Positions 16,901 to 54,386 of a stretch of 64,000 nucleotides of DNA are shown here, piece after piece. Position 1 is the first letter of the stretch, and every line of letters begins with the position of its first letter. Location: NCBI GenBank assembly GCA_009859145.1, contig VRVR01000017.1, positions 143,170 through 207,169 of the forward strand, given 5' to 3'. The notes under the pieces were generated by a model. It made no database searches. It was not told where the DNA came from and saw only the letters and a list, made by a program, of their open reading frames with translations. Position numbers and translations under genes: made by a program. This stretch comes from Andalucia godoyi And28 (taxonomy: Eukaryota > Protista > Jakobida).

Positions 16901-19900
16901 TCCAGACTGCGGATGCCAGAAACCACGCATCTCCACAACCTGGCGTATCAGAGAAATGATTCGCTGTGTGCCATACTTATCCGGAGACGGAAGATTGATT
17001 TCATCACAGAAGATTACGAGCCACTTTCCTGGCTGAGACGGACGACAGACAAGGCCATTAGCGGTTCGTTCAATGTCGCAATACCTTTCAATTGTGCGGA
17101 AGATGATATTGGGGCCCGTCGCAGAGGAAAAAGAAAGAGAAACAACTTGAATGTCCGGCATCCGCTGGAGAACAGAGGTCAGAGTCATGGTCTTTCCAGA
17201 TCCCGGTGGTCCACAAAGAATGACTGGCACACGAAGATTCATCCAAGACCGAAGTACTTCCTCGTGACGAACTGTGTCTACTGTCGGAATGACAACATCC
17301 GGAGAACCCGCGCGGGATGCTTCGACCTCGGTATTGGGCACCAGAGACGACCAAGACACCATTTCTGCAGTCTCAATTTCAAGTCCGAGCTGCAACAGAT
17401 CTGCAGGCCCTGAGTAGTGAAGATCAGGCACAACAGTTGGCGCCGTAGAGCCTACAAACTTGGCAAATTCTTCGCGAAGACTTAGAGGTAGCGTTCCACC
17501 CAGTCCCCAAACAACCGCAAGCAGCAACTGGCGGTCACAAAATTTCACCAAAAATTCTGGATCGAGGGGCAAAGGCATGTTGGAATCGCGCGACCAATCA
17601 AGCACCCGTTGCACAGACCCCATCATAAGTGCAGAGACGGCCTCAACCCCATACGCCAAAGATACGTCCATGATATGCTTCCCAGAAAACGAGCCCGAAT
17701 TCACGTGGTTCCAGCACTTTTCAAACAGCTCGTACTCAACAAACAGTTTCCTGAAGCGCTGACTGACGACAGCAAACACACCAAAAGGATCGGTGGAAGC
17801 TCGGGCAGCACAGGAAAGTGCAAAGTGGTTCAAGCGCATCGTGGGCGACACGATACCGTCGGCGAACCAGATCATGCCGCATCGAGATACTGTAGCCAAC
17901 GTAGCTTGCTTCAGATCCTGTACTTCAAACACCAAACGGACATTCCGTGGCAGGGAGATACGTTCACCGTTGGGGAGAGTCAACAGTTTGTTATCGTCCA
18001 AGACAGAATTCAAGTTTTCAACCCATTCCGGATCGACATCACCATCAAACACAATCCAATGGACACAGGTCGTCACGTCCGACACGGGAGCATCCGCGAT
18101 CTTGCGTAGGATTTTGGTGAAAACACCATCGCTCCAGTCACGGGTGGTAGGATCCAAATAGCCGTATAGTTCCTCTTTCGTCAATGACTTTGGATCAAGA
18201 ATGTAACTTCTTGCCGAAAGCCCTTCAACGGACGCTCCAGCTTCCAGAGCCAGCTGCCACAAAGACGACTTTCCGCTTCCAGCAGGGCCCACAACCATCA
18301 AACCATGATGCACTTTGCTGATTTGATATACTTGCACAGCCTTGTCCAACCACATCTCGCTGGAAATCAGATGGCGACGTTGGCACAGATTGCTGATCTT
18401 CGCAACAAACTCCGAGTGAACGGCACTAGAAATCTTCGTTCCTCTGAAGACATCCATCAGCAGAGACCGCAGCAAAGGCACATCCTCTGGTACTAATTTT
18501 GGAATCAAGCTGTCACAGATGGCCGTGACAATCAGTTCGAACTCTTCGGAAGAAGAGTGCAGATCAGCACGGGATTTCAAAACTTCTCGTTTGATGTTCC
18601 CTGCAGTTACCAACACGCTTTTCAATGCACGCAATCCAAAATCGTAGTGAGATTGCTTTGACAATTGGTCAAAGCAAAGTGTGAAAAACGGAACGATTTT
18701 TTGGGATAGTTTTTCTGCGCTTTGAAAACCTTGCGCATAGAGCATAACTTGTGCAATCAACTCCTTGTCCGGCTGGATCATGGCAAAGGAGCGGAAAAGT
18801 TGCTTCAAATTGTCTGGGAGGTTTCTGCGACCTGCATATCCCGGGTTCATCGTAACAAAAATTCCTGTTTCCGGTCGAACCTGCACATGCCTTCCAATCA
18901 ATTCAATACGCCCGGCAGCAGGACCCGCTCGAATTGCAACTTGGATCAATTGGATCTGTTGAGAAACAGCAGAAAGAATGGATTCCTCGAGTCTGTTGAA
19001 CTCATCAAAGCATCCCCATGCGCCGCACTGACATAAACCCACAAAGATTCTCCCCATGGAACGGACATCAAAGGTGTCATCACAATTGAATACCAAAGTA
19101 AATCGTCCTAAGGCCTGGCCGAGTGCTTTGACCGTTTCCGTCTTGCCCGTTCCAGCAGGACCAAAAGGGGAGCCACCCAGCCGGGAATGCAAAGCTTGAG
19201 TCAACGTCAAAAACGCTCTATCTGTCAACGGGGTCTGCACCAGTCGGTCTTCAATACCGAAATATTCAAGACCATACACAAATTCTGCATTTGCGCATCT
19301 TACCAACACCGACCTTTCCGCGTCATTCCGTCCCTTTTCAGACGAAGAAGAAAGATAGTACCGAAAGAAACAAAGCCAGTCAAAGGATCCAGCGGTTTCG
19401 CATTTTAGAGAAATCAAATGCCGAGCGACATCGCGTTCGTGCACCAGTTCCGTAATCAGCGACACAGCTTTCTTGTGACGACGAGAATCGGCATTGGACA
19501 CATTCTCATGGGTCAACAACTGAATACATAAACCCAAACAATCAGCAAGATCCACAAGAGATTTTGCAGCATTGGACGTTGAGAGCGACTTCTCGACTTC
19601 GCTTGTCCACCAAACCTGAGATGCAAGCAGCGCAGCTTGACAAGGGAAACTGTCAAACCAACGAACGTATTGTGTGGAAAATGCCGAACGCTCAGCACGA
19701 GCAATTGCAAACAGCTGTTCGGTGGCAGAATAGACAGCACTCAAGAGAGAAGCTTGGATCTCGACATTTAATCGCGTTAACCAGGCGTGAACTGGTTCTT
19801 TGGGCAACACTACCACTGGCGTCACAAAGCCGAGTTCTTCCCCTTCTAATGACACAACAGAAACAATGGAATTGTCTCCGCAGTTCAAAGAAGCGACGCC

Positions 19901-22900
19901 AGCAAACATCTTCCGAAGATGCTTACTCACGCGCGCAACATCGGCGGCCTGCGCAAGCATCTCCAACAAATCTTCATCCCCTATAAAGTAAAAGCGTGGA
20001 AAAGAACTCCGCTGTTTTTCAAGATAATCTCCCAGAGATTTCTGAATTTTGGAAAGAGAATCGGCAATGCGCTCCAACACTTTCAAAAGATCCTTGTTGG
20101 AATCGAATACCTCCAGAAACCTAGGATTTTGCTGCACTTTCTTCATGAGACGCACAAACTCTGAATCAACAGATGAAAACTTATTCGCCTCTGCAGGCAA
20201 CTGCATCCGAATATCAGCAGCGGAGACGCCGCCAAAGATTCCTTCAAGATAAACCCATCTCCTCTGCACATCAGACCACACATCAACCAATACACGAATT
20301 CGGCTCAGTCTGTCTTCCCACTTTTCCGCTGTATCTTTAAACGGGAAATAGAATGGCGATTGCTTCATTGCTGTCAGAGAATTGAGATGCTCAGACATTT
20401 TTGATGACAGATCATCCCAGCCCTTGATTAATGAGCAGCGCGACTTGTAGGTCACAAGTTCCACGACACAAGACTCCCAGCTCTCGGCAACTTTGCTGAG
20501 AAACACTTCGAGAGCAAACTCTCCTTGCGCAGACCGGATCACTTCCTTGAAAACCATGTCGAACGTCAGCGGCTTCAAATCATAAACATATCCTAACGTA
20601 ATGTCAACAATGGAAACGGGCTTCGACGAGTTCAGCTTTCTGAACAAGAGAGCCCAGTGCCGGTCTTTCACAAAATCGCTGCGAAGGTCCACAATGATTC
20701 CGTGACATTTCTTAAACGACTCCAATGTTTCTCGCTGGAATTGCAGAGCAGGATAAGAATGCATCCAGGCCGGAAGACTAGAGACTTCTGCGAGAACTTC
20801 GTCGATTTGCGCGCGGAGTTTTCGTGGAACAATTCCAGAAAACGGCAAATCTCTGATGGCATCAATCCGATTAGAAACAGCAAAACACTCAGTCCAAACC
20901 TTCTTCATTTCCCTGAGCTCTGACAACACAGTGAGCATTGGGTTGTCAATATCCGGAACAAATGTAAAAGAAGCGTCCAGAACATTTCGAGCCATGTTAA
21001 TCTTGAACCAGTTTTCAGACAATGCGGATGCACGGTCCTCGTACTTTTGAATGCTCAGCAATGCTTCTTGGGGATGAACACCACCTTTTGTCGGTCGCTC
21101 AGAGCTCCACTCTTCTTCGAATTGCCGGACATAACCCCTTAGCAAACGGTCTTCATCATGAATACGCGCCTTGAGATCTTCGATAACGTTCTTCATCGCC
21201 TCTGATTTTCTGGATACCATTTGCTGCACACGATCCCATGCTCCGGATATCTGATCCACATGCACCCATTCTGACGGAAGAGGGATTTTGTTTCTGTCCA
21301 ATACCTTTTGCCCTCTGCGAAATAGATCGACAGACTGCGCCCAGTTGACAAGGGACGCATTGATTCTTTGCAAAAGAGTCACGCACTCAATGGCATTCTT
21401 GGTACTGGTTTCAAAATCAACATCTTCGAGATCTTTTCGAGTCCTTGCAAAATCGGCAAGTAGCTTCGCACCTTCGTCGTGCAACCGCGTACGAAAATTC
21501 TTCAAGAACCTCTGCATCCAGTCCTCGTACTTATCTCGAACCTTCTTGGAGATCGCGCGGCAATCGACAGTAGTTGCACCAAATTGCGCAATAGAATCTT
21601 CCGAGTCGACAATTGACCGTTTGCTCGAGACGCTTTCAAAAAGAGAGAGCCACGCACGCAGGTCAGATCCCAACTTTTCAACAACAACCTCCGCATCCAT
21701 CGACCACAGTGCCTGGTAGCGAAACCAGTCATTGCAGTATGTCGCCACGGCAGACACAGTATCTTCAATTGACGCAAACGCAGCACGTAGCAACTTGCTA
21801 TCCACGAACGAGAGCAGGTATCGATACGTCTTACTTTCCTTTTGAAACCCAGAACCGAGAGCTGCATCAAACTGTTTTGCCCTTATCATAGGAATCGCAC
21901 AGAGAACAGAGATGACTTCGTCAAGTTTTCGATACCAGTGGGTTCGGACTGTCTCCAAAGGCGGTTCAACAACAATGACAGACGACACAAGTTTCAGATG
22001 AACAGTTAATTGGTTGACGGACGCTCGCTCAGTGACGTCGGTGCTTTGCAATTCAGAATCGTTTTCGTTCTTCTGGACAGAGAAACAGGATACGAAATGC
22101 GACACTTCTGCTGACAACTTTCTCAGTATGACACCAGACACATGTTCGTTGATAACCACTATCCACTCAGAAGCATGCGAATACAATTCGGAGTGCAGAA
22201 CAACATAGTCCACAAGATCCTGGATTTCGGACACAGTGGAAGACACTTCGGAAGGGAGTGCCGAGGAGCACTTCTCAATCAGTGCAAAAATGCGCTTCTT
22301 CCTCGTCAGCAAGTCATCGACTTTGCGCTCGAAGGATCTTGCAGCAGAATTCAAAGGAAGGCAGAACTTTGAAACAGATACCTCTCGAGGACCGCTCCAC
22401 TCATGTTTCATGCCCATTTCAAGCAGACGGTAGATATCTGCGAGATCCCGAGCTAACAAACACTGCATTTCCTTGGCATGGACATGCAGTTTTTCGAGGG
22501 ATCGACGAACGCCGTCGACTGCTTCAATGAGCAGCATTGCAGCCTTCTGTGAAGTTACCGCGGCAAGCACAACACTCTTTACCAGAGAAGAGACATAGTC
22601 GCTGATCTTAAACAGACGAAACTGATTCGTCTCATTAATCAGATCCAAGAGCGCCATCGGGTAGTTGACTTGAAATACCAGTTCCGTTCCCTTCTTGGCA
22701 CCTTGAGAAGTCTTGACATCAACAATACTGAACACAGGACCTGCCATCACTGGTTCGTCGTCTGCACCTTGCCTCTTCCATTGAACAAACGAACAAGTCC
22801 GGATCCAACTTTCCGTTTTAGAAGTCCAATCATTCATCAAATTCCTGAGATTCGTCTGAATTTTCGATCGGAACGGATCTGATACTTGTCGGAATCGAAA

Positions 22901-24961
22901 AAGACTGGAATGCAAATGTCCAACTCCAAGACCTGTCAAAATGTCCTTGCACCTCTGAATTAAGCCTTCCGGATCCAGCTTTGAATCGACAGAACCAGCA
23001 TTACTTTTGATGAAGCTGGTTCCAGATGCGATCATCAACCTGGCTTCGGCATTTTCTGGGTACAAAATCTGGCAGAATGCACATACAAGAGCGGTACCGG
23101 CAATTTGAGGAGCAAGAGGCTTTGAATACGGCAAATTGGGTGCATAAACGCTCTCCACCAAGTCCTGATAACGAATACCAAGAAATCTCGCAAGATCCCC
23201 TGTCAGCTCCCAGTTTGTGCTGTTCCCACGAGAAAGGCGCTTCAGTTCTCCAATACCCAATCCAAAAATCTCAGAAACTCTCTCAGAGTACCGAGCAACG
23301 TGCCTATCAATCTGCAGTGCCCAGGCAGCGGCACCCGAAACAGGAGTAAGACTGCGAGTTCGAGCCAGACGGGAGAAATCTGCAGCTTCGTATCCCTTTT
23401 TGAATGTTTCTTCCAAAAACCGAACCACCCCAACCGCATAGTCAACCCAAAGTTTCCGAAAATCCGAAACAACAGCTGCAAGCTGCGGCCGGCTCATCCA
23501 AGCAGGAGAAGATGAGAGTAGTCGATAGACTTCCTCTTCGTTCTCAAACGTTACGGAAGGAAACTTATCACGAATCAGATCCGCAACGCGCGCCTCCACA
23601 TTCTCCAAGCGACCAAGAAAATGTGCAGAGGCATCTTTCCAGTCCATTGGAGAAAGTAACAGCGGATCGCTGATCTTCTCTTGGACTTCCTTGTTGATCG
23701 AGACCACTTCCGAGTCAAATCGCAAAAGGTCAGAAAAAGCCTTTCTAAACTCGACAATCTCCGACATTCTCTCAACAACACTTGCAGGGTCATCCAAGAA
23801 CATCTGTGAAACAAGCAATCCCGAAAACTCTTTCTTTCTCGACTGTTCATTCACGGATTTCACGATTTCATCCACGTTCTCTCCGAAATCTTTCTGAATT
23901 TCTACAAATGAAGCACGCAAGGCCTCCAATTCCTCCAGAGAAATAGACATCAGATTCTTCGAACGGGCAATGCGCAAGAAGGCGTCTTTGACTTCCAAAG
24001 ATACACCACGCAGCATTGCACGAACATAGTCGTACACATCATTCAGCGCCACGCCAGGTCTTGCGGATTTCAAGGTTTTAAGAAACAAAAGCACAGAGTC
24101 TTTTAGCTCCTCCACCTTTGTCGCAGTTCGCAAGGACATCAGACAACTCTGCGGAAACTTGTTCAAACTCGCAGTGTACTTCTGAACTCTCTGGCGAGAT
24201 GTCACAGTAAGATCGTGCAAATTCACAGCCAGGGGCTTTTTCTTCGACGTTCTTAGAACTTGAAGAGTCATGTCCACTGCAGGATGCTTTAGCTGACGCT
24301 CAAGATCTTCCAAGGCACGCTCAAGCTCGGACCAAAAAGAAAAATACAGATCCAGAGCAACACTGTCGGACGATGGTTTTGCTTTCGACGCCAGCAATTG
24401 AACTTCCTGCACAAACTGAGAGTATGACTTTTCGAGCCTCGTAAGAAAAGACACGTCTTGCAATTTCTCAGAATCCAGCGGTGTTCCAGATTCGATCGCA
24501 TTGAGAACTTCTGGCAAGCACGATTTCAGCAGATTGGCTTCCGGAACAGAAGACATTGCAGAGCACTGATCAAGTGCGCGTTTCAATTGGTCCACCTGAA
24601 CGAGCACAGGTTTAGCCGAGGCCTTGTTCGACAATAGCGGTTCAAACGCAGTGGACAAATACGAATGAAGAATGGCAAGTGGTTCATCGTCAGCAGACAA
24701 ACAAAACAATTGGGAGTGCAGAGGCACATCCGGAGACACACGAAAAGACGATGGATTCCGTTTAATCACGACAAATCCAAGATCATGTGGAATCTGCACC
24801 CCAACAGAAAGAATACGAAACACTGGAGCATTTGGAGACACCAGAAGAGCCTTGGCATTCGGCTGCTGAACAAACTGGGAGTACTGCTCTTCTCGAAAGG
24901 CATCGGCGGGGAGATCCTGCCCAAGGAAGACCTGAGCTGCTTGTTTCAAATACTCTTCCAT
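10955..24961 (-). CDS. DYNC1H1: Cytoplasmic dynein 1 heavy chain (intronless, about 4668 aa)
   Basis: Four P-loops GPAGTGKT, GPAGSGKS, GPPGSGKT, GASGSGKT; LGGSPFGPAGTGKTETVKALG, FNCD, WGCFDEFNRL, stalk coiled coil; likely start MEEYLKQ at 24961. Confidence 0.97.
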   Translation of the reverse strand: MEEYLKQAAQVFLGQDLPADAFREEQYSQFVQQPNAKALLVSPNAPVFRILSVGVQIPHDLGFVVIKRNPSSFRVSPDVPLHSQLFCLSADDEPLAILHSYLSTAFEPLLSNKASAKPVLVQVDQLKRALDQCSAMSSVPEANLLKSCLPEVLNAIESGTPLDSEKLQDVSFLTRLEKSYSQFVQEVQLLASKAKPSSDSVALDLYFSFWSELERALEDLERQLKHPAVDMTLQVLRTSKKKPLAVNLHDLTVTSRQRVQKYTASLNKFPQSCLMSLRTATKVEELKDSVLLFLKTLKSARPGVALNDVYDYVRAMLRGVSLEVKDAFLRIARSKNLMSISLEELEALRASFVEIQKDFGENVDEIVKSVNEQSRKKEFSGLLVSQMFLDDPASVVERMSEIVEFRKAFSDLLRFDSEVVSINKEVQEKISDPLLLSPMDWKDASAHFLGRLENVEARVADLIRDKFPSVTFENEEEVYRLLSSSPAWMSRPQLAAVVSDFRKLWVDYAVGVVRFLEETFKKGYEAADFSRLARTRSLTPVSGAAAWALQIDRHVARYSERVSEIFGLGIGELKRLSRGNSTNWELTGDLARFLGIRYQDLVESVYAPNLPYSKPLAPQIAGTALVCAFCQILYPENAEARLMIASGTSFIKSNAGSVDSKLDPEGLIQRCKDILTGLGVGHLHSSLFRFRQVSDPFRSKIQTNLRNLMNDWTSKTESWIRTCSFVQWKRQGADDEPVMAGPVFSIVDVKTSQGAKKGTELVFQVNYPMALLDLINETNQFRLFKISDYVSSLVKSVVLAAVTSQKAAMLLIEAVDGVRRSLEKLHVHAKEMQCLLARDLADIYRLLEMGMKHEWSGPREVSVSKFCLPLNSAARSFERKVDDLLTRKKRIFALIEKCSSALPSEVSSTVSEIQDLVDYVVLHSELYSHASEWIVVINEHVSGVILRKLSAEVSHFVSCFSVQKNENDSELQSTDVTERASVNQLTVHLKLVSSVIVVEPPLETVRTHWYRKLDEVISVLCAIPMIRAKQFDAALGSGFQKESKTYRYLLSFVDSKLLRAAFASIEDTVSAVATYCNDWFRYQALWSMDAEVVVEKLGSDLRAWLSLFESVSSKRSIVDSEDSIAQFGATTVDCRAISKKVRDKYEDWMQRFLKNFRTRLHDEGAKLLADFARTRKDLEDVDFETSTKNAIECVTLLQRINASLVNWAQSVDLFRRGQKVLDRNKIPLPSEWVHVDQISGAWDRVQQMVSRKSEAMKNVIEDLKARIHDEDRLLRGYVRQFEEEWSSERPTKGGVHPQEALLSIQKYEDRASALSENWFKINMARNVLDASFTFVPDIDNPMLTVLSELREMKKVWTECFAVSNRIDAIRDLPFSGIVPRKLRAQIDEVLAEVSSLPAWMHSYPALQFQRETLESFKKCHGIIVDLRSDFVKDRHWALLFRKLNSSKPVSIVDITLGYVYDLKPLTFDMVFKEVIRSAQGEFALEVFLSKVAESWESCVVELVTYKSRCSLIKGWDDLSSKMSEHLNSLTAMKQSPFYFPFKDTAEKWEDRLSRIRVLVDVWSDVQRRWVYLEGIFGGVSAADIRMQLPAEANKFSSVDSEFVRLMKKVQQNPRFLEVFDSNKDLLKVLERIADSLSKIQKSLGDYLEKQRSSFPRFYFIGDEDLLEMLAQAADVARVSKHLRKMFAGVASLNCGDNSIVSVVSLEGEELGFVTPVVVLPKEPVHAWLTRLNVEIQASLLSAVYSATEQLFAIARAERSAFSTQYVRWFDSFPCQAALLASQVWWTSEVEKSLSTSNAAKSLVDLADCLGLCIQLLTHENVSNADSRRHKKAVSLITELVHERDVARHLISLKCETAGSFDWLCFFRYYLSSSSEKGRNDAERSVLVRCANAEFVYGLEYFGIEDRLVQTPLTDRAFLTLTQALHSRLGGSPFGPAGTGKTETVKALGQALGRFTLVFNCDDTFDVRSMGRIFVGLCQCGAWGCFDEFNRLEESILSAVSQQIQLIQVAIRAGPAAGRIELIGRHVQVRPETGIFVTMNPGYAGRRNLPDNLKQLFRSFAMIQPDKELIAQVMLYAQGFQSAEKLSQKIVPFFTLCFDQLSKQSHYDFGLRALKSVLVTAGNIKREVLKSRADLHSSSEEFELIVTAICDSLIPKLVPEDVPLLRSLLMDVFRGTKISSAVHSEFVAKISNLCQRRHLISSEMWLDKAVQVYQISKVHHGLMVVGPAGSGKSSLWQLALEAGASVEGLSARSYILDPKSLTKEELYGYLDPTTRDWSDGVFTKILRKIADAPVSDVTTCVHWIVFDGDVDPEWVENLNSVLDDNKLLTLPNGERISLPRNVRLVFEVQDLKQATLATVSRCGMIWFADGIVSPTMRLNHFALSCAARASTDPFGVFAVVSQRFRKLFVEYELFEKCWNHVNSGSFSGKHIMDVSLAYGVEAVSALMMGSVQRVLDWSRDSNMPLPLDPEFLVKFCDRQLLLAVVWGLGGTLPLSLREEFAKFVGSTAPTVVPDLHYSGPADLLQLGLEIETAEMVSWSSLVPNTEVEASRAGSPDVVIPTVDTVRHEEVLRSWMNLRVPVILCGPPGSGKTMTLTSVLQRMPDIQVVSLSFSSATGPNIIFRTIERYCDIERTANGLVCRPSQPGKWLVIFCDEINLPSPDKYGTQRIISLIRQVVEMRGFWHPQSGAFVALERVQFVGACNPPSDPGRHPLSMRFLRHAPVLFVDFPSSDSLNRIYGTLMRAALRMLPQLSQLALSSSQFMVKVYSDSQRRFTPDMQPHYIYSPRELSRWMRAVVEVVNSSTQNEISGDTFVRLLVHEGLRLFHDRLVSSSEREWTLDLFTSSARTLFGNPSFFINLDVSLQQPILFSNWLTRAYVSVDAEELRQYVRARLKSFADEEMDVHLVVFDEVLNHVLRIDRVLRQPLGHLLLAGASGSGKTVLSRFVAWMNGLSVFQIKAHRGYTLADFEADLRSVLKRSGVKGEKICFIFDESNILDTAFLEYMNALLASGEVPGLFEGDELAALLNSCRESARLAEERIDSDDDLFKWFLNRVQRNLHIVLTMNPSNPDFTNRTATSPALFNRCVVDWFGDWNELALSQVASEFVSRIDLSQCFASAAEEGLMDHFKRLSSDQYEQESAFSVAASQSLVGLHDTGSSVGAVFTRRQGVSFFVTPRHFLDLIRHFERIMLEKSAQILDQQLHVTRGLEKLGQAELEVASLKASLKEYEERLAEKSHAANQKLSQMMVEQREAEEKKKTSEEMSVVVERRADEVRNRREDAEKELATVEPLVADAKEAVREIKKKQLDELRALPNPPAAVQFCLQAVCTMLGKEKAAADWEGIRRIIRDSDFIASIVEFDTSQIDEKLRKRMEKFMSNDLFDFDAVNRSSKACGPLVKWTKAQLSYSFVLERVSPLRQEVLSLQTELDDLRLKQRALIEMISELEMRISGYKEEYANLIAEAEHIKLEKSTVQSKAERSSSLLSNLIEERRRWDSQTKSFSSDMSTLVGDSLISSAFLAYAGYFDEYYRHSLLIPRWMALLDRLHIPYRPSLSLVDMLSAPSKRLMWASVGLPADDVCVENAVMLERFNRYPLIIDPTGQGVQFLISSRTAIGGSNAVVRVSFLDQSFMAALEDAIRCGTTLLVEDVEHLDPVLNPVLNREVQKTGGRMLVRVGAREVDLSPSFALYLITKNPLHQFSPDVSSRVTFVNFSVTPASLVSQSLALILLSERPDIENRRTEVLRSQGEYRVRLRNLEEELLNALSDSTANLLEDDVVLRKLETVKKEAFDVQNRMQETDVVMRDLSRAAAVYQPFAAVCSRIYFSLLRLSEINNLYQFSLDTFWVILKTVLSSPHAEGDRGSELRISSFIISLFSSAFSRIRRSLLYVDALALASRFSIMYAVDVCGVDISARESELLFHLSVSLEKSGSGKTAMPAALQSKLSASSSTALQSLLSLASFKLLQDQLKSQDATTMTAVFDILSAEKPEVLASQLLGSQANGQDAASKVLCAFHSLLLTKALRPDRLVFAMESFVLSVFGAEFLRDSSEANLRRIVESVVPSSPLLMISTPGYDPTDAVEKLASETLGVQFLSVALGDADSIVEAESLLNSATRSGSWLLLKNVHLALNWIETLDKRLATLSQMSRPSFRLFLSSESNSALPSTLLRRSFILMNEAAPGIQASVSHVLRTVAASSNVVQPPLERIRMHVLLSWLHAVVQERLRFIPLGWSKKYEFNDADLRFAFDVVDLWIDRVSKGRQNVRPDELPWNAIRSLLTSSIYGGKIENKRDLMILRALVESFMTADAYKDGFVLVKNEVLLSSRIVNLEDFSTWVASLPSTEGPNWIGLPISAQHMVHLRQGEHLMKKILILQASMEDESAYEKDLSGSKSADSVASGTAIIISSCNHWLDVLPATISLPEMRRDIGEAVGRFLVREIGLLNAVLLRVRQDLSDLLSVLKGQSRFTNSTRMTLRLLSADTVPADWRMFETAPNPLASAWIPELSVRHAQLRSIVDACSRDGTSSTVRVCLGKLLSPQAFITAVHQLAAEILEKPLETLCPKLVFENMDDPVSNKLPVQFIVTDLQLEGCVWLDGAVSLAESGVGTASLPCMKLTFSEAPDTSSSTGLKRDVVTMPLYTNTSRTNMLMDVVLPQGFQESTSVVCLRGCAIISWKYH

Positions 24962-25360
24962 GGGTATGCGCACGCAACGTGTGTGGGTGTGGTAGAGTGC
25001 TGACTTGCTTGCTTGCTTGGGGTTTTTAAAATTTATTTCTCTTCAAGTTGCAACAAAAAGAAGGATTTCCTTTCAAAGAAAGCGGACTCGTTGCGTGAGG
25101 GGCGCGCATCTGGAGCCTCCCGAATTCGAAATGGAAACGAAACCTGTAAAGCATCAAGTGATACAAACGAAACCTTATCCAACAATGACAAAAGCCTCAA
25201 GTATCACACAATGCATAATTCTCGCAAACAAAGAAAGAAAAAAAAAACCCTGCAGAAAAACAGTATCACACCGCTGCCACCTATTGCGATGTGATGAAGC
25301 AGTCTAAAGCGCAAGACAACAAAAAACACTGCCACGCGCCATGCGCATGCGTTTGCTATC

Positions 25361-48220: not shown

Positions 48221-48439
48221 CGAAAATCGTCGTCCGGCGAATATGGTTTTTTGCGCATTTCGACTTTTCTGCAAAAATAAAAAATAAAAAAAGAATGCAG
48301 TTTTCTTTCCTCTTGCTTTTCTCCTTTCCCCAAAAAATCACTTTGCAGTTCAGTTATTTATATATATTCATTATTCTTTAGCTCTACTACTGCTTCTGCA
48401 TTCTCTGTCCGCCGTTTTTTCTTGCTTCATTTCTGCTTC

Positions 48440-50153
48440 ATGTCTATTGGCAAGAGCAGCTCCTCTTTGTTTGTTTTTGCGATTGTCGGAGCTGTGTTTG
48501 CGCACATTGTCTCTCCGTTGTTTTCCCGAGCTGCACTGAGCGCGAGGCAAGTTGTTCTGCGAATGCAAGAAGATCCGGTTGTTGTCGTCGGCGGTGGGCT
48601 TGCTGGTCTCTCGGCAGCAATTGAAGCACTCCGCTCGAATCCGGTTGTCCGTGTTGTTTTAGTGGAGAAGGAAGCTCGAATGGGCGGCAATTCGGCAAAA
48701 GCATCTTCTGGTATGAACGCTACTCCAACTCCTGTGCAGGAACGCGAGCATATCCACGATTCGCTTGAGGGGTTCCTTGCAGACGTTATCTCTTCTGGTG
48801 ACGGGAGATCAGATGCGGAACTGGTCAGGGTTCTTGTGGACAGGTCTGCGGACGCATGGAACTTCATCACTTCCTTTGGAGTTAATCTTGAGGACATTTC
48901 TCAGTGTGGCGGACATTCCGCGCCACGGACGCACAGAAACTTGGACGATCCCGTCAAGATGCCAAAAGTTGTGAATGTTGGATGGTCCATCATGTCTACC
49001 CTCATAGCGCACCTGGAAACAGAAAGCAAGAAACCTGAAGATGCTCGGGTGACCATCATGACCGGTTCGGAAGTTGTTCGACTTCTCGTCTCGGAAACCA
49101 ACAAGGTTTCTGGCGTTGAACTCAAGGATGGACAGAAAATCGCGGCATCTGCGGTGATTCTGACAACGGGTGGCTTTGGCGGAGACCTTTCTCCCGATGC
49201 CATGATTTGGAAGCACGCTCCCGAACTTCGCGGATTCGCCACAACGAACGGTGGCTTTGCCCGCGGAGATGGTGTCAGGATGGCTGCGCAAGTGGGCGCA
49301 AAAATGCAGGATCTTGATCAAGTGCAGATTCATCCGACTGGATACGTGAATCCTAAAGAGCCTGGTGCCCCGACCAAGTTCTTGGCCCCCGAGGCCCTGC
49401 GCGCAGTTGGAGGCATTCTTTTGAACAACAACGGAGAACGATTTGTCAATGAACTTGGTACTCGTAAGAATGTTTCTCGCTCCATGCTCGACAAGTGTCT
49501 TCCCTGGGATGGCCTTACAGGGCAAACAAAGGCATCTGTGATCGTGTTTTCCTCGGCTGCTGCAAGCGAATTCGGCACTCGAATGCTGGATTTCTATTCT
49601 AGTATGTTTCTCTCGTCTTTCTTGATTAACTCTATCTCTTCTTTTTAAATTATTTGTTGATAATCGGGAGGGAAAAGAAGAAGACGTTGTAGCAGTTTTG
49701 TCGTGAACTTACTCCCCTCCCCTCCCCCCTCATCTTGTGTTCGCAGAAATTGGCTTGATCATGAAGGCGGGGAATGCGGCAGAGCTTGCAGAGAAGATCC
49801 GCGTACCGGCTGCGAATGTCGAGCGAACGCTTGCAGAGTACGTTCGGTCGTCGCAAGTTGGAAAGGACGCCTTTGGAAAAACGGTGTTTCGAAACCCCCC
49901 TTCTTCCACCGAGCAGCTGTTCTATGCATTTGTCACTCCTTGCATCCACTATACAATGGGAGGCTGCAAGATCAATGTCCATGCTCAGGTTGTCCGAGAG
50001 GATGGATCGCCGGTAGATGGACTGTTTGCCGCTGGCGAAGTTTCAGCAGGTGTGCATGGTGCCAACCGCCTGGCTGGAAACTCCTTGTTGGAATGCGTCG
50101 TTTTCGGTCGGATAGCCGGAAGGGAAGCGACCCGTCTGGCTGCGTCACTGTAA
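48440..50153 (+). CDS. Soluble fumarate reductase (Osm1/Frd1, flavocytochrome c flavoprotein type); exons 48440-49601, 49747-50153
   Basis: [91 protein letters not shown]; hydrophobic N-terminal extension. Confidence 0.92.
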
Positions 50154-50545: not shown

Positions 50546-50560
50546 AAAAAGTCGCAAAAA
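50546..50560 (-). terminator. Pol III T-run terminator(s) of the 5S gene
   Basis: Two T5 runs on the minus strand (50560-50556, 50550-50546) directly after the 5S 3' end. Confidence 0.75.
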
Positions 50561-50676
50561 GTACAGCGCTGGGAATTCCCGAGTGGTCACCCACCTCAGT
50601 ACTACTCCAGCCTGAGAGCACTTGACTTCGCAAATCGGACGGGATGCGGTATTTTCACTCTAGTATGGCCGTACCT
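50558..50676 (-). rRNA. 5S rRNA
   Basis: 119 nt AGGTACGGCCATACT...CATCCCGTCCGAT...GAAGTCAAG...TAGTACT..GTGGGTGACC..GGGAA...GCTGTACTTT; terminal stem closes; followed by T5 Pol III terminators. Confidence 0.96.
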
Positions 50677-50831: not shown

Positions 50832-51917
50832 ATGTTTCGAGGTCTGGTTCCTGTTCGAAATGCGTCCACTGTGTTGACGATCGCAACTGTGATTGTCGGC
50901 GTTCCAGCTTGTGTGTATGGTATGTGTGCCGACCGACAAGACAATTTTTTCTCTCCTTTTCTTTTCTCATTCGACTTGCACTCTGTTCTCGACTGATTTG
51001 ATTGGTGTTTCCCACCCGTCCCCCAACCTCTCCTCATTTTGCGATGCGAAGCTCTGAAATGTTTGTCGCTAGTTGTTTTTCAGAATAAGGTGTTGTACAT
51101 GAATTATTTTCCTCCGGGAAGTCGGAAGCTTGACGCGGATCCGAGAACGTCGTTTGGTGCATCGTTCTCGGATGTCTCGATTGCTACTGCAGATGGAATA
51201 CGACTGCATTGCTGGTCGATTCCGGCTGCAACAACTCCGGACAAACAGCCTACTTTGGTGTACTTCCACGGCAATGCGGGCAACGTTGCGCATCGCATTG
51301 ACCTGCTGAAGAATCTGCACAAGCTGAATGTGAATCTATTTGTTCCGTCGTATCGTGGATACGGGCTAAGCTCTGGGAGTCCCTCTGAGAGCGGTCTGAA
51401 ACTCGATGCACAAGCGATCATGAAGTACGTCATGGAGCGTGAATTGCAACATGCACAGTTCATTCTATTCGGTCATTCGCTGGGGGGCGCAGTCGCGGCA
51501 TACGCAACGTCCCTGCACCCAGAAAGAGTTAGCCTATTGGTTCTAGAAAACACATTTACGAACATCCCAGATATGCTGGACGAGTTCTATCCCAAGTGGA
51601 CGCTGTATCGCTATCTGAAATTCGCGTTGAAGTCGATTTGGGATACGCGATCGATTGTTAAGGATCAACGAATGCAGGGCGTTCCGATGCTCTTCATTTC
51701 TGGTGAATTTGATGAAATTGTTCCACCAAAGATGATGAAGATGCTGTTTGACGAATCCGTTTCAGAGAGCAAAGCTTGGCACTCTGTACCTCGAGGGCTT
51801 CATAATGATACGTGGATAGTTGACGTGCCTCGGTATTCGTCTGCCATATCCGCACGCATCAAACGATACCAGAGCTCTGCACCGACAAATGGCGATGGCA
51901 GGCAGAACTCCAGCTAG
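50832..51917 (+). CDS. ABHD13: ABHD13/Bem46-like alpha/beta hydrolase (exons 50832-50919, 51073-51917)
   Basis: N-terminal TM, VFQNKVLY, YFHGNAGN, SYRGYGLSSGSPSESGL, GHSLGGAVA, LENTF, LFISGEFDEIVP, GLHNDTW; phase-consistent intron. Confidence 0.9.
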
Positions 51918-53833
51918 CGTTGCATGTTTTGATTTGCATAGACGGTTGACCATGAAGCGCCAATCGGAAACACATGCACTCTCGCTGTTGACAATGCCTG
52001 CATAGACTTGATGACGGACAGCAAGTACGTCGTCTGCAAACATCGGTCCTTCACATTTTGCAATCCTGTGTACTCCTCATCTTGCACAGCTGCCATGCTG
52101 AGCTGTGCCGGGTGCCGGGTGCAAACACATCGCGCGGCATATTCGACTTCCTCGACAGACATGCCCTTTCGGTACGGGGCCTCGGAAAAAGAATTCAATT
52201 TGGAGTCGAGATGTCTGCGCCCGCATACATATCGATTCGCAAAGTTCAGTGTAAAGAATCCAAGCGACATCACGATGATTTTTGACATTACTGGAGGGAC
52301 AATTGGCGCAAATCTGGAAGTGCTCATCAACGACTTGTGGCAACTCTCAATGCATTCCACGATGGAGGAAGGGGTTGCCTGAAGCCTTTCTTCTTCATTG
52401 TGTGGATAGAGCAGACGGCAAGCCGAGTACGCGGGAGTCGAATGGGTGCGATGGAATCTCTTTGTACTCGAATAACCTGCATCTTCAAAGCCCATGCACT
52501 CGTGCGCGCAGCAAACCTGCATCGACTGCCCCCCGATTTCTAGGACACAGGTTTTTTCAACATTCAACGGCGATTCTCGCAGAGCAGCCCGCATTCCAAG
52601 ATCAGCTTCCTCACCAGGAGACAGAATCTTGACATTTGCACCAACGGGAACATTCACAGACTTCCAGAGCGCATGCAGCTTGTCCACAGCTGCAGACATT
52701 GTGACTGCCCCCGAATCGACGATCTTTCGAATTCCCCCTGTTGCAACAATATCGACAGTCGGATCAGTCCACATTCCAAGCAGGGCACTCGACACATCGT
52801 TTAAAATTCGCCTCCAGTCCTGCGTGACTGCGTCATCCGCATTTTCAAGAATCTTTTCGTGCACTGCAATCGCGCTTTTTTTCACTCTCATCCAGTGACG
52901 CATTTCCAGTCCTTTGAAGAAGACCACATCGGCCGCCGTTCCGGAAGATCCGACATCCATGATGACAGACATCCGACACCAATCAGGATTCGCATGAACG
53001 GCACAGTGGATGGCCGGCACAGACCGAGACACAAACAACACTTGGTCCACACTCATGCGCGTCGCATATGCATTCACCAGAACGACTCTTGCAGTTGGAA
53101 ACACCGACGCAAACCCCTTGAGATGTTCCCATCGATTATCAAAAAAGGTGATTGTCATGCCTTCTCGGTACCGTGGTCCCAAAAAGCCACGAAACTTCTC
53201 GTACGACTCCAAGGAGTTCTTGGAGATAAAGTCAGCATCTTCAATCGTAAATCGCAGCTCGCGCCCAAACAGGTGTGAAACTCCTATGGCTTGAAGGCAT
53301 TCCTCGATGTGGGCCGAAGGACTGTTGGAGTACACGACAAGCAAGTATCCCTGCTCTTCCAATGCTCGCAAACCATCCCGCAACTCGTAGTCTAGTTCAA
53401 GACCAGCCGACGAGCACACTCCGCGGTGCACCTTCTCGAGAAAGAGGCGGGCCTGGCTCCTGTGCAGAATGTTTTCATCTACCAGTCCAGTAATTGTCGT
53501 TCCGTACTTTTCACAAAAGTACTCTGCAGTTTTCGATGGATCGCTCGTCAGTTCGCGAATGGCGGTATTGAATTGTTCATCTAACAGTGGCCGAGTCAGG
53601 TACTTCGCAGCATACATTGTGTCGTCCACGTCAAATACCATGATTCCAACATAGTCCGTCCTTCTTCGGTGAGAACCACGCATCAGAACATGCGCAGTCC
53701 CGTCATGCTCATGCTCAATCGGATTAACGATGCTATTGCCGTCTAGATCAATTTCCAATTCGGCAGCGCGAGCAGCATGACACAGAAATATCCACAAACA
53801 CGAATACAGCGCAAATGTCTGCAAAAACTTCAT
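51914..53833 (-). CDS. Secreted fusion of SDT1-type HAD 5'-nucleotidase-like domain and GDA1/CD39 NTPDase-like domain
   Basis: Signal peptide MKFLQTFALYSCLWIFLCHAARA; HAD motifs VFDVDDTMY, KYGTTITGL, YSNS, FFDN; apyrase regions MDVGSSGT, ATGGIR, ILSPGEEA, LEIGGQSMQ, ASWS. Confidence 0.8.
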   Translation of the reverse strand: MKFLQTFALYSCLWIFLCHAARAAELEIDLDGNSIVNPIEHEHDGTAHVLMRGSHRRRTDYVGIMVFDVDDTMYAAKYLTRPLLDEQFNTAIRELTSDPSKTAEYFCEKYGTTITGLVDENILHRSQARLFLEKVHRGVCSSAGLELDYELRDGLRALEEQGYLLVVYSNSPSAHIEECLQAIGVSHLFGRELRFTIEDADFISKNSLESYEKFRGFLGPRYREGMTITFFDNRWEHLKGFASVFPTARVVLVNAYATRMSVDQVLFVSRSVPAIHCAVHANPDWCRMSVIMDVGSSGTAADVVFFKGLEMRHWMRVKKSAIAVHEKILENADDAVTQDWRRILNDVSSALLGMWTDPTVDIVATGGIRKIVDSGAVTMSAAVDKLHALWKSVNVPVGANVKILSPGEEADLGMRAALRESPLNVEKTCVLEIGGQSMQVCCAHECMGFEDAGYSSTKRFHRTHSTPAYSACRLLYPHNEEERLQATPSSIVECIESCHKSLMSTSRFAPIVPPVMSKIIVMSLGFFTLNFANRYVCGRRHLDSKLNSFSEAPYRKGMSVEEVEYAARCVCTRHPAQLSMAAVQDEEYTGLQNVKDRCLQTTYLLSVIKSMQALSTARVHVFPIGASWSTVYANQNMQR

Positions 53834-54386
53834 GGAAACCCCCCGCTCCGCTTTCTGAGAGCCGCAGAAGAAAGAGAAGGAGATGAATGAATAAATGAAT
53901 GAATGAATGAATGAGGAAAACACGGCAAAGCAACAGTTGGCAAACTTTCGCTATGATCCGAAAATGAGCATCGTTAGTGTTTTCGATTGTTGTCAAATTC
54001 ACCCGACTCAAAAAACCGGGCTCCCGTCCGGGCGTGTCCTCTCCAGAACACCAGGAACTCGCAACATCCGGATGGGGCAATTGCAAGGACGTCATTGGCC
54101 AAGCAATCTCCAGTCTCCTGAACGTGCCTCGCCAGCGCTCAAGGCGAAAAGACAGAAGAAAAACAACAAAGGTTTTACTTAAGAGGACAGATTGCTCAAA
54201 TAAGATAACGACGGGATGAGCCCTGAATAAACACACGCACACACGCACGCAAGCACGCACACGAGCAGACACGAGCAAACCCAGTCAGCTGATCCGCGGA
54301 GGGCCTGCGCTACCCTGCATAGTAAAAAAAAAAGAGAGAATACATTGGTTTCGTCGAGTGAAACACAACCCCACAGCGGGGTGGTA

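What the first reader, a model, noticed from the sequence alone, without database searches (positions are those of the whole stretch)
51914..53833. Secreted HAD nucleotidase-apyrase fusion: possible one-chain NTP-to-nucleoside enzyme
Seen: one intron-free ORF with a signal peptide, an SDT1/pyrimidine 5'-nucleotidase-like HAD domain (DVDDT intact; motif IV DN rather than DD) and all five apyrase-conserved regions in variant form. Known: NTPDases make NMP and 5'-nucleotidases make nucleosides, steps done by separate CD39 and CD73 in animals, and SDT1-type enzymes are normally cytosolic. Inference: an extracellular or lysosomal nucleotide-scavenging cascade in one polypeptide. I do not recall this architecture being described.
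Basis: partly seen in the sequence, partly recalled or inferred. Interest (0 to 1): 0.7.

Follow-up and report, generated by a model that had tools for sequence, protein, structure and literature searches.

The report
Secretory HAD–NTPDase-like two-domain phosphatase
A single gene of an unidentified protist joins a nucleotidase-type HAD domain to a very divergent apyrase/polyphosphatase-type domain behind a secretion signal. The combination is real, almost unique in public data and undescribed, but a one-chain NTP-to-nucleoside cascade is not proven and is doubtful for the gene's only relative.

Summary
The ORF is real: 639 codons on the minus strand (51914-53833), with a signal-peptide-like N-terminus. 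Residues 62-250 form a HAD domain whose best match is pyrimidine 5'-nucleotidase (TIGR01993, E 1.5e-13). Its motif I is DVDDT and its motif IV is DN.

Residues 288-639 form a two-lobed ASKHA phosphohydrolase domain. The top 50 Foldseek hits are all NTPDases or Ppx/GppA (best E 4.5e-11). Profile comparison puts ACR1-4 in register with CD39 (E 2e-5, probability 76%). No Pfam GDA1_CD39 hit is reported, and the sub-threshold HMM hits are to Ppx-GppA.

The fusion is not an artefact. Among 1.84 billion cluster representatives, only one full-length relative exists. It is a type-II-anchored metagenomic protein present as two variants, 31-35% identical end to end. That relative lacks the HAD nucleophile Asp (FALDGV), yet its HAD domain is under purifying selection (dN/dS 0.09). 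All ASKHA catalytic motifs are conserved in both lineages.

The conserved enzyme is therefore most likely the NTPDase-like domain. The HAD step may survive in the window's copy but is not family-wide. I class this as a new architecture and a new divergent lineage of known superfamilies. Function is inferred, not shown.

The parts
51914..53833 (-). Whole coding sequence: 639 codons plus a TAG stop. It is a single exon.
   Evidence: ORF listing and translation. Aligns over residues 62-636 with P0005, E 8e-65. GC3 is 0.54, like the neighbouring genes.
53765..53833 (-). Signal-peptide-like N-terminus, aa 1-23 (MKFLQTFALYSCLWIFLCHAARA). Probable cleavage is after A-R-A.
   Evidence: Read from the sequence. 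The homologue has an N-terminal hydrophobic anchor at the same end, with Kyte-Doolittle score above 2.0. No dedicated predictor was run.
53651..53764 (-). Poorly conserved acidic/His-rich N-terminal extension, aa 24-61. It ends in H-R-R-R-T, a possible propeptide junction.
   Evidence: 17% identity to P0005 here, against 30-37% elsewhere. Sequence.
53084..53650 (-). HAD phosphatase domain of the SDT1 / pyrimidine 5'-nucleotidase type, aa 62-250.
   Evidence: TIGR01993 E 1.5e-13. PF00702 26.9 bits. SSM1/SDT1 structures E 0.014. 55 HAD-only proteins matched at E 8e-9 to 1e-3. Motif alignment A5.
53618..53632 (-). HAD motif I, D68-V-D70-D-T72. Nucleophile and general acid are intact.
   Evidence: The homologues P0005 and P0182 have A-L-D-G-V here.
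53135..53140 (-). HAD motif IV, D232-N233. Relatives have DD or ED.
   Evidence: Alignment A5. P0005 has DD. One standalone relative, P0014, has EN.
52973..53083 (-). Interdomain linker, aa 251-287, with the conserved VP-x-x-x-CA and P-x-x-C (C277, C286).
   Evidence: Invariant columns of alignment A1. 31% identity.
51917..52972 (-). NTPDase/Ppx-GppA-type ASKHA phosphohydrolase domain with two lobes, aa 288-639.
   Evidence: AF2 model with pLDDT 68.5 and pTM 0.67, showing a duplicated beta-beta-beta-alpha-beta-alpha-beta-alpha topology. The Foldseek top 50 are all NTPDase or Ppx/GppA, E 4.5e-11 to 1e-8. hhalign against CD39 gives E 2.2e-5.
52937..52957 (-). ACR1 / phosphate-1 motif, D293-V-G-S-S-G-T299.
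   Evidence: Aligned to DAGSSHT of CD39. D, G, S, S, G and T are invariant between the window and P0005.
52727..52744 (-). ACR2-like motif, A364-T-G-G-I-R369.
   Evidence: Aligned to ATAGMR of CD39. Conserved in P0005.
52604..52627 (-). ACR3-like motif, I403-L-S-P-G-E408-E409-A. It carries the candidate catalytic base Glu.
   Evidence: Aligned to IITGQEEG of CD39 and IISGNEEA of E. coli PPX. This is part of the stretch that gives the Pfam Ppx-GppA hit.
52517..52540 (-). ACR4 / phosphate-2 motif, E432-I-G-G-Q-S-M-Q439. Glu replaces Asp; the terminal Gln is as in NTPDases.
   Evidence: Aligned to DLGGASTQ of CD39 and DIGGGSTE of PPX. EIGGQS-x-Q is invariant in P0005.
51950..51955 (-). Candidate ACR5 residues, S627-W628.
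   Evidence: Invariant in P0005. Falls on the GW of CD39's GWTLG only in a permissive/global hhalign run, with low column confidence.

Best explanation
The gene encodes a secretory-pathway (secreted or lumenal) two-domain phosphohydrolase of a very small, unannotated eukaryotic family.

The C-terminal ASKHA domain is a highly divergent NTPDase (GDA1/CD39)-like enzyme. It keeps the phosphate-binding loops, the ACR3 Glu and the ACR4 Gln. I infer that it hydrolyses terminal phosphates of nucleoside tri- and/or diphosphates, with a divalent metal, outside the cytosol. This is the conserved catalytic core of the family.

The N-terminal domain descends from an SDT1-type pyrimidine 5'-nucleotidase. 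It is retained as a tightly coupled module, with a conserved Cys-containing linker. Its role across the family is not catalytic, since the nucleophile is absent in the sister lineage. It probably binds nucleotide or NMP, or has a structural role.

In the window's copy the HAD motifs I-III are intact, so it may still dephosphorylate the NMP product, giving nucleoside plus Pi for uptake. The DN variant of motif IV makes this uncertain.

Shown: the ORF, the domain identities at superfamily level, the conservation of the fusion, the motif states and purifying selection.
Inferred: localisation, substrates and activity.
For: - Architecture. Residues 62-636 of the window protein align with 54-627 of P0005 (E 8e-65, 31-35% identity). 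Both domains and the linker are similarly conserved: 35.5%, 31%, 37% and 30%. A second variant, P0182, sits on another contig.
- HAD identity. TIGR01993 is the best family for both proteins, at E 1.5e-13 and 4.4e-10. The YGTT-x-GL cap signature, the S/T-N motif and the Lys are present.
- ASKHA identity. The AF2 model has pTM 0.67, and the Foldseek top 50 are exclusively NTPDase or Ppx/GppA.
- hhalign against CD39 orthologues: E 2.2e-5, probability 76%, with ACR1-4 in register. The N-lobe alone gives E 7.8e-6, probability 84%. The global alignment spans the whole domain at E 4e-6.
- hhalign against PPX/GppA: only E 0.004-0.008, probability 5-8%.
- All catalytic-motif residues of the ASKHA domain are invariant between the two lineages.
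- Selection: dN/dS is 0.049 for ASKHA and 0.093 for HAD between the two metagenomic variants.
- Secretory context: signal-peptide-like N-terminus in the window; N-terminal anchor and 11 sequons in P0005; 10 conserved Cys. From my own knowledge, eukaryotic GDA1/CD39 enzymes are all lumenal or ecto and disulfide-bonded, whereas Ppx/GppA enzymes are cytosolic.
Against: - No Pfam GDA1_CD39 hit is reported. The sub-threshold HMM hits are to Ppx-GppA (E 5e-4 and 4e-3) and to TIGR03706 exopolyphosphatase.
- The profile search of PDB sequences finds nothing significant.
- The reference alignments used for hhalign were shallow and of unequal depth: 14 CD39 orthologues against 4 PPX/GppA sequences.
- The AF2 model is of moderate confidence and rests on a two-sequence alignment.
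- ACR4 begins with Glu instead of the usual Asp.
- The window protein has no N-glycosylation sequon.
- No signal-peptide predictor was run, and no expression evidence exists.
- The gene is absent from the protein collection that holds four neighbouring proteins of the window, with EukProt as their source.
- HAD motif IV DN may or may not abolish activity.
Confidence: 0.5

Rival explanations
1. Both domains are active in the window protein, and one secreted chain converts NTP/NDP to NMP (ASKHA domain) and NMP to nucleoside plus Pi (HAD domain) for nucleoside scavenging.
For: - The window copy keeps DVDDT, the YGTT-x-GL cap signature, motif II Ser and motif III Lys.
- Its best family is pyrimidine 5'-nucleotidase.
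- One standalone relative, P0014, also has Asn at the second motif IV position.
- The ASKHA catalytic motifs are intact.
- The N-terminus looks secretory.
Against: - The sister lineage has no HAD nucleophile, yet its domain is kept under purifying selection. The fusion is therefore not maintained by the cascade.
- Each lineage carries a different lesion in the HAD catalytic set: nucleophile Asp to Ala in one, motif IV Asp to Asn in the other. This pattern is typical of a domain released from catalytic constraint.
- There is no biochemical evidence.
Confidence: 0.3
2. The C-terminal domain is a Ppx/GppA-type enzyme: an exopolyphosphatase, or a hydrolase of another polyphosphorylated substrate, acting on extracellular or vacuolar polyphosphate rather than on nucleotides.
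For: - The only HMM-library hits are Ppx-GppA (PF02541, E 5e-4 and 4e-3 in the two lineages) and TIGR03706.
- The best PDB profile hit is exopolyphosphatase 3mdq, E 0.4.
- The top Foldseek hit is Aquifex Ppx/GppA 1t6c, E 4.5e-11.
- The window's ACR3 reads EEA, as in PPX.
Against: - All these hits are below threshold and cover only the ACR3-ACR4 stretch, which the two families share.
- hhalign favours CD39: E 2e-5 against 8e-3. The global alignment to PPX fails.
- The GSSGT, TGG-x-R and terminal Gln of ACR4 are NTPDase-like.
- The C-lobe is Cys-rich and about 200 aa long, and the protein is secretory. From my own knowledge these are NTPDase traits that Ppx/GppA lacks.
Confidence: 0.12
3. The protein is a pseudoenzyme: a non-catalytic nucleotide- or glycan-binding secretory protein in which neither domain hydrolyses anything.
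For: - The HAD domain is degenerate in one lineage and variant in the other.
- ACR4 has Glu for Asp.
- The legume NTPDase-family entry in the Foldseek/PDB list is named a Nod-factor-binding lectin-nucleotide phosphohydrolase (5u7x).
Against: Every ASKHA phosphate-binding and catalytic motif residue is invariant across 31-35% overall identity, and dN/dS is 0.049. That is stronger conservation than a mere scaffold would require.
Confidence: 0.06
4. The finding is an artefact: a chance ORF, an assembly chimera of two genes, or a decaying pseudogene.
For: The protein is not in the protein collection although four neighbouring proteins of the window are. No expression data are available.
Against: - The ORF is 639 codons long and has a full-length homologue at E 8e-65.
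- The same architecture sits on two further contigs, with dN/dS 0.08.
- The linker is conserved.
- Codon composition matches the neighbouring genes.
Confidence: 0.02

Closest known systems
GDA1/CD39 NTPDases (apyrases; Pfam PF01150), e.g. mammalian CD39/ENTPD1, yeast Golgi GDA1, plant apyrases
   Same: - Two-lobed ASKHA fold.
- ACR1-4 are collinear and in register, with a similar catalytic residue set: Asp and Ser/Thr in ACR1, T-G/A in ACR2, Glu in ACR3, GG-x-S-x-Q in ACR4.
- Secretory or lumenal topology: the window copy has a signal-peptide-like N-terminus and the homologue a type II-like anchor. The C-lobe is Cys-rich.
- A possible ACR5 Trp and a possible conserved disulfide pair, C571/C598 (low confidence).
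   Different: - No hit to the Pfam family model.
- Only 10-15% identity to solved NTPDases.
- ACR4 starts with Glu rather than Asp, and ACR2 reads TGG rather than TAG.
- The C-lobe is about 60-100 residues shorter than in CD39.
- It is fused to an N-terminal HAD domain. None of the 120 listed hits of the CD39 search has a precomputed Pfam family other than PF01150.
Ppx/GppA phosphatases (Pfam PF02541), e.g. E. coli PPX and GppA, Aquifex 1T6C
   Same: - Same branch of the ASKHA fold, with equal Foldseek scores.
- The only, sub-threshold, HMM hits.
- The EEA of ACR3, and the short spacing between ACR3 and ACR4.
   Different: - Below the gathering score: 20 bits against 27.
- hhalign probability is only 5-8%.
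- Lacks GSNS in phosphate-1 and the Glu after GGGST.
- Secretory and Cys-rich, whereas (my own knowledge) Ppx/GppA proteins are cytosolic and mostly prokaryotic.
SDT1/SSM1-type pyrimidine 5'-nucleotidases (HAD subfamily IA, TIGR01993; PDB 3NUQ, 3ONN, 3OPX)
   Same: - Best-matching family for the N-terminal domain in both lineages.
- Motif order, the helical cap with YGTT-x-GL, and motifs I-III in the window copy.
   Different: - 50.9 bits against an equivalog cutoff of 142.9.
- Motif IV is DN.
- The sister lineage lacks the nucleophile.
- The domain sits behind a secretion signal and is fused to an ASKHA domain. The matched relatives are stand-alone proteins of 170-330 aa, and by my own knowledge they are cytosolic.
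The two-enzyme CD39 + CD73 ectonucleotidase cascade of animals, and single-enzyme bacterial adenosine synthases such as S. aureus AdsA
   Same: If both domains are active, the net chemistry (NTP to nucleoside, outside the cell) would be the same. The AdsA background comes from the abstract of PMC3213008.
   Different: By my own knowledge, CD73 and AdsA are calcineurin-like metallophosphoesterase 5'-nucleotidases, not HAD enzymes. In animals the two steps are on separate proteins. Here the second step is unproven, and it cannot occur by the standard HAD aspartyl-phosphate mechanism in the sister lineage.

Membership tests
GDA1/CD39 NTPDase (PF01150) | Match to the curated family HMM at or above the gathering score | tested here: not met
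   No PF01150 hit was listed, even at E<=10, for the whole protein, the isolated C-terminal domain or the homologue.
GDA1/CD39 NTPDase (PF01150) | ACR1-ACR4 present, collinear and in register with a bona fide NTPDase | tested here: met
   hhalign of A2 against 14 CD39 orthologues gives E 2.2e-5 and probability 76%. Aligned pairs: DVGSSGT/DAGSSHT, ATGGIR/ATAGMR, SPGEEA/TGQEEG, EIGGQSMQ/DLGGASTQ. The residues are variant in places, e.g. Glu for Asp in ACR4.
GDA1/CD39 NTPDase (PF01150) | ACR5 (GW-x-LG) near the C-terminus | tested here: inconclusive
   S627-W628 is invariant in the homologue. It falls on the GW of CD39 only in permissive/global hhalign runs with low column confidence. The C-lobe alone scores E 0.01.
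GDA1/CD39 NTPDase (PF01150) | Two-lobed ASKHA fold of the NTPDase/PPX branch | tested here: met
   AF2 model with pTM 0.67. Rat NTPDase1 and 2, plant NTPDase and human NTPDase4 score E 4e-10 to 4e-9 with TM about 0.55. Ppx/GppA scores equally well.
GDA1/CD39 NTPDase (PF01150) | Lumenal or ecto topology with conserved disulfides | tested here: inconclusive
   The window has a signal-peptide-like N-terminus, the homologue an anchor and 11 sequons, and 10 Cys are conserved. No predictor was run and no disulfides were mapped.
GDA1/CD39 NTPDase (PF01150) | Divalent-cation-dependent hydrolysis of NTP/NDP to NMP | not testable with these tools
   Needs a biochemical assay.
Ppx/GppA (PF02541) | Match to the family HMM at or above the gathering score (27 bits) | tested here: not met
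   20.0 bits (E 5e-4) for the window domain and 17.2 bits for the homologue. Only the ACR3-ACR4 stretch is covered. TIGR03706 scores 14.7 bits against a cutoff of 307.
Ppx/GppA (PF02541) | Profile-profile similarity across the domain | tested here: not met
   hhalign against E. coli PPX, two further PPX chains (8jgw, 8jgx) and E. coli GppA (6pbz) gives E 0.0076 and probability 5%. The global alignment fails. The reference alignment is shallow, with 4 sequences.
HAD superfamily phosphatase (PF00702) | Family HMM at or above the gathering score | tested here: met
   26.9 bits against 26.4 for the isolated domain, which is marginal. In the full-length scan it scores 23.7 bits. 55 HAD proteins matched at E<=1e-3 in a library of 1.84 billion.
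HAD superfamily phosphatase (PF00702) | Catalytic motifs I (DxDxT/V), II (S/T), III (K), IV (DD / GDxxxD) | tested here: inconclusive
   The window has I, II and III intact and IV as DN. The homologues lack the motif I nucleophile, reading FALDGV.
SDT1-type pyrimidine 5'-nucleotidase (TIGR01993 equivalog) | Equivalog-level score (cutoff 142.9 bits) | tested here: not met
   50.9 bits, E 1.5e-13. It is the best family but far below the cutoff. The protein is a relative, not an equivalog.

The most novel reading that the evidence does not exclude
This is a previously unrecognised family of eukaryotic secretory enzymes in which an NTPDase-like domain and an SDT1-like HAD nucleotidase are fused. 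In the window's organism it works as a natural single-chain NTP-to-nucleoside ectonucleotidase. That would be a HAD-based counterpart of the animal CD39+CD73 pair. The sister lineage would then show the same scaffold after loss of the second step.
Probability: 0.3. Interest if true: 0.75.

Novelty: new variant of a known kind. Interest (0 to 1): 0.55.

Why it matters
Extracellular nucleotide breakdown is normally split between unrelated enzymes: NTPDases, then metallophosphoesterase 5'-nucleotidases. A natural fusion of an NTPDase-like domain with a HAD nucleotidase would be a new solution to that pathway. It would also be a compact candidate for nucleoside or phosphate scavenging in a protist.

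Whatever its function, the C-terminal domain defines a lineage of the NTPDase/PPX branch so divergent that curated HMMs miss it. Only one other cluster exists among roughly 15 billion predicted proteins. It is therefore useful for understanding how far ACR motifs can drift, for example Glu for Asp in ACR4.

The pair of lineages also offers a natural experiment on how a catalytic HAD domain becomes a conserved non-catalytic module.

Tried and rejected
- Word-indexed homology search with the full protein: no hit at E<=1e-3.
- Exact-sequence look-ups of the target: absent from both collections.
- Two metagenome-contig scans, with HAD-derived and ASKHA-derived peptide patterns: pattern matches but no confirmed relative.
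- Single-sequence AlphaFold of the full protein: unusable, pLDDT 39.
- PDB sequence searches with the protein and with the two-sequence profile: nothing significant for the C-terminal domain.
- The CD39 homology search returned only vertebrate ENTPD1 orthologues in its listed top 120. The NTPDase reference profile is therefore narrow.
- Organism identification failed. Four neighbouring proteins of the window are in the collection, with only 'eukprot' given as source and no names, and a look-up of one neighbour found no contig.
- Literature searches for a HAD-apyrase fusion found nothing relevant.
- I first took the window for a kinetoplastid sequence and dropped the idea: genes alternate strands and a spliceosomal intron is present.
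- Recent horizontal transfer or contamination, rejected: codon composition matches the neighbouring genes.
- A paralogue elsewhere in the window: none found.
Full report
**The observation**

The minus strand carries an uninterrupted reading frame from the first ATG at 53833 to a TAG at 51914-51916, giving 639 aa. The frame is open upstream only to a GTG at 53923, with no earlier ATG.

The N-terminus, MKFLQTFALYSCLWIFLCHAARA|AE, has one Lys, a 16-residue hydrophobic core and A-x-A before the likely cleavage site. I read this by eye; no predictor was available.

Codon composition (GC3 0.54) matches the neighbouring genes, and the window holds no paralogue.

The window is eukaryotic, and its genes alternate strands. 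Pfam hits identify these genes:
- an ERGIC3/Erv46-type protein
- an ORC1-like BAH+AAA protein
- an AIF-type oxidoreductase
- a soluble fumarate reductase
- a cAMP-receptor-like GPCR
- an AP mu subunit
- Pet127
- an exportin-7-like protein
- a 4672-aa dynein heavy chain

Spliceosomal introns exist in this genome. The fumarate reductase gene has a phase-consistent GTATGT...CAG intron at 49602-49746. 'Intron-free' is therefore a property of this gene, not of the genome.

**N-terminal domain**

Residues 62-250 form a HAD phosphatase domain.
- Pfam PF00702 scores 26.9 bits against a cutoff of 26.4 when the domain is scanned alone.
- The best NCBIfam family is TIGR01993, pyrimidine 5'-nucleotidase. 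It scores E 1.5e-13 (50.9 bits), far below the equivalog cutoff of 142.9.
- The yeast SDT1/SSM1 structures match at E 0.014.
- In the exhaustive search of 1.84 billion cluster representatives, 55 stand-alone HAD proteins match this region at E 8e-9 to 1e-3. The three I scanned are themselves TIGR01993-like.

Aligned with such relatives, the window protein keeps:
- motif I, D68-V-D70-D-T72
- the YGTT-x-GL cap signature
- the motif II Ser-Asn
- the motif III Lys (K205)

It has D232-N233 where relatives have DD or ED. One stand-alone relative, P0014, has EN.

**C-terminal domain**

Residues 288-639 hit no Pfam family above threshold.
- The best hit, in both this protein and its homologue, is Ppx-GppA (E 5e-4 and 4e-3). 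It covers only the stretch equivalent to ACR3-ACR4.
- GDA1_CD39 is not reported at all.
- A PDB sequence-profile search finds nothing significant.

An AlphaFold model built on the two-sequence alignment reached pLDDT 68.5 and pTM 0.67. It shows two beta-beta-beta-alpha-beta-alpha-beta-alpha lobes.

Foldseek against the PDB returns, as its top 50, only Ppx/GppA enzymes and NTPDases. These include Aquifex 1t6c at 4.5e-11 and rat NTPDase1 3zx2 at 3.6e-10, plus plant NTPDase and human NTPDase4. TM-scores are about 0.5-0.56 and identity is 10-15%. The fold places the domain in the NTPDase/PPX branch of ASKHA but does not separate the two families.

| hhalign comparison | vs 14 CD39 orthologues | vs 4 PPX/GppA sequences |
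|---|---|---|
| Whole domain, local | E 2.2e-5, probability 76% | E 0.0076, probability 5% |
| N-lobe alone | E 7.8e-6, probability 84% | E 0.0042, probability 8% |
| C-lobe alone | E 0.01 | E 0.27 |
| Global | Spans the whole domain, E 4e-6, probability 72% | Fails, probability 0.1% |

- The CD39 alignment puts DVGSSGT on DAGSSHT, ATGGIR on ATAGMR, SPGEEA on TGQEEG and EIGGQSMQ on DLGGASTQ.
- The global alignment places S627-W628 on the GW of ACR5. It places C571 and C598 on two invariant Cys of the CD39 alignment, C402 and C425 of P0062. From memory I take these to be a CD39 disulfide pair; I did not check this. Column confidence in this part is low.

My reading is that this is a very divergent NTPDase-like domain. 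ACR1-4 are established, ACR5 is suggestive, and family membership by the curated model is not met. The reference profiles were shallow and unequal in depth, so the preference for NTPDase over PPX is moderate, not decisive.

**Is the fusion real, and how common is it?**

Among 1.84 billion representatives of about 15 billion proteins, exactly one protein matches over both domains. This is P0005: 632 aa, E 8e-65, aligned 62-636 against 54-627.

P0005 comes from a 5.2-kb eukaryotic contig in a JGI metagenome, next to a chromodomain protein. A 97%-identical variant, P0182, lies on a 10.6-kb contig of the same sample with the same neighbouring genes.

Identity to the window protein is even along the chain: HAD 35.5%, linker 31%, ASKHA N-lobe 37%, C-lobe 30%. 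The linker carries conserved Cys. An assembly artefact is excluded.

The window's own protein is absent from the collection, although four neighbouring proteins of the window are present with EukProt as source. The gene therefore appears to be unannotated. Literature searches found no description of such an architecture.

**What the homologue says about function**

P0005 and P0182 have FALDGV where the window has FDVDDT. The nucleophilic Asp is Ala and the motif Thr is Val, and the YGTT cap signature is also degraded. A HAD phosphatase cannot work without the nucleophile; this is established for the superfamily.

Yet the domain is under purifying selection. Between the two metagenomic variants, dN/dS is 0.093 for HAD, 0.049 for ASKHA and 0.084 overall, from 46 synonymous and 13 non-synonymous differences.

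By contrast, every phosphate-loop and catalytic-motif residue of the ASKHA domain is invariant between the two lineages.

The window copy carries a different variation: Asn at the second motif IV position. By my own knowledge this position is the Mg2+ ligand in related HAD-IA enzymes. Two lineages with two different lesions in the HAD catalytic set suggest that HAD catalysis is not what maintains the fusion.

**Topology**

P0005 has a short N-terminal tail, an 18-residue hydrophobic anchor and 11 N-x-S/T sequons. This is the type II layout of Golgi GDPases, by my own knowledge. The window protein has a shorter hydrophobic core with an A-x-A site, no sequons and 18 Cys, 10 of which are conserved in P0005. 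Both should face the lumen or the exterior.

**Best explanation, and how sure**

The protein is a secretory two-domain phosphohydrolase. I am highly confident of the architecture.

Its conserved catalytic core is the NTPDase-like domain, which I infer hydrolyses NTP/NDP. The SDT1-derived HAD domain is an obligatory partner whose role across the family is non-catalytic, such as nucleotide binding or structure. In the window's copy it might still remove the last phosphate. Composite confidence is about 0.5.

| Rival explanation | Confidence |
|---|---|
| A polyphosphatase-type activity | about 0.12 |
| A pseudoenzyme | about 0.06 |
| An artefact | about 0.02 |

**Novelty and verdict**

Both superfamilies are known. 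The combination, the secretory placement of an SDT1-like domain, and the extreme divergence of the ASKHA domain are new. I class it as a new variant of a known kind.

Interest is 0.55. An ectonucleotidase or HAD specialist would find the architecture and its rarity notable. Function rests on inference, the organism is unidentified, and the most exciting reading (a one-chain cascade) is weakened by the sister lineage.

Noticed in passing
window 50558-50676 (-): A solitary, full-length 5S rRNA gene (Rfam RF00001, 98.5 bits) lies between the fumarate reductase gene and the alpha/beta-hydrolase gene. 5S genes are therefore dispersed among protein-coding genes here. It is the only Rfam hit in the window, and no tRNA genes were found.
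   Followed up: partly
window 49602-49746 (+): The soluble fumarate reductase gene (ORFs 48422-49648 and 49737-50153) is split by a 145-nt GTATGT...CAG intron whose phase fits both reading frames. The genome therefore has spliceosomal introns even though most ORFs in the window are single-exon.
   Followed up: partly
window 51914-51917: The target gene and the convergent alpha/beta-hydrolase (BEM46-like, PF00561) gene at 51039-51917 (+) overlap at their stop codons. Their 3' UTRs must overlap completely on opposite strands.
   Followed up: no
window 51914-53833 (-): The 639-aa product is absent from the ~15-billion-protein collection, although four neighbouring proteins of the window are present as singleton clusters with EukProt as source. 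The gene seems to have been missed by the source annotation or transcriptome.
   Followed up: partly
window 53660-53671 (-), aa 55-58: An H-R-R-R stretch sits just before the conserved HAD core, at the end of a non-conserved acidic/His-rich segment (aa 24-61). It could be a polybasic propeptide-processing site.
   Followed up: no
window 10955-24973 (-): A 4672-codon single ORF encodes a complete dynein heavy chain, with DHC_N1/N2, AAA1-6, stalk and C-terminal domains, and no intron.
   Followed up: partly
L001 1-5157 and L002 5354-10520: The two metagenomic contigs carrying the homologue are 95.8% identical at the DNA level over 5.2 kb and share gene order (MTS-type methyltransferase, chromodomain protein, HAD-ASKHA gene). 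They are two strains or haplotypes of one uncultured eukaryote. The methyltransferase appears to be split into two ORFs, probably by an intron.
   Followed up: partly
window 53870-53920 and 54225-54275 (-): Just upstream of the target's ATG lie a (CATT)n-like microsatellite (cattcattcattcattcatttattcattcatc) and a GT/GC-rich run (gtgcgtgcttgcgtgcgtgtgtgcgtgtgt). They sit in the intergenic region shared with the ERGIC3-like gene.
   Followed up: no
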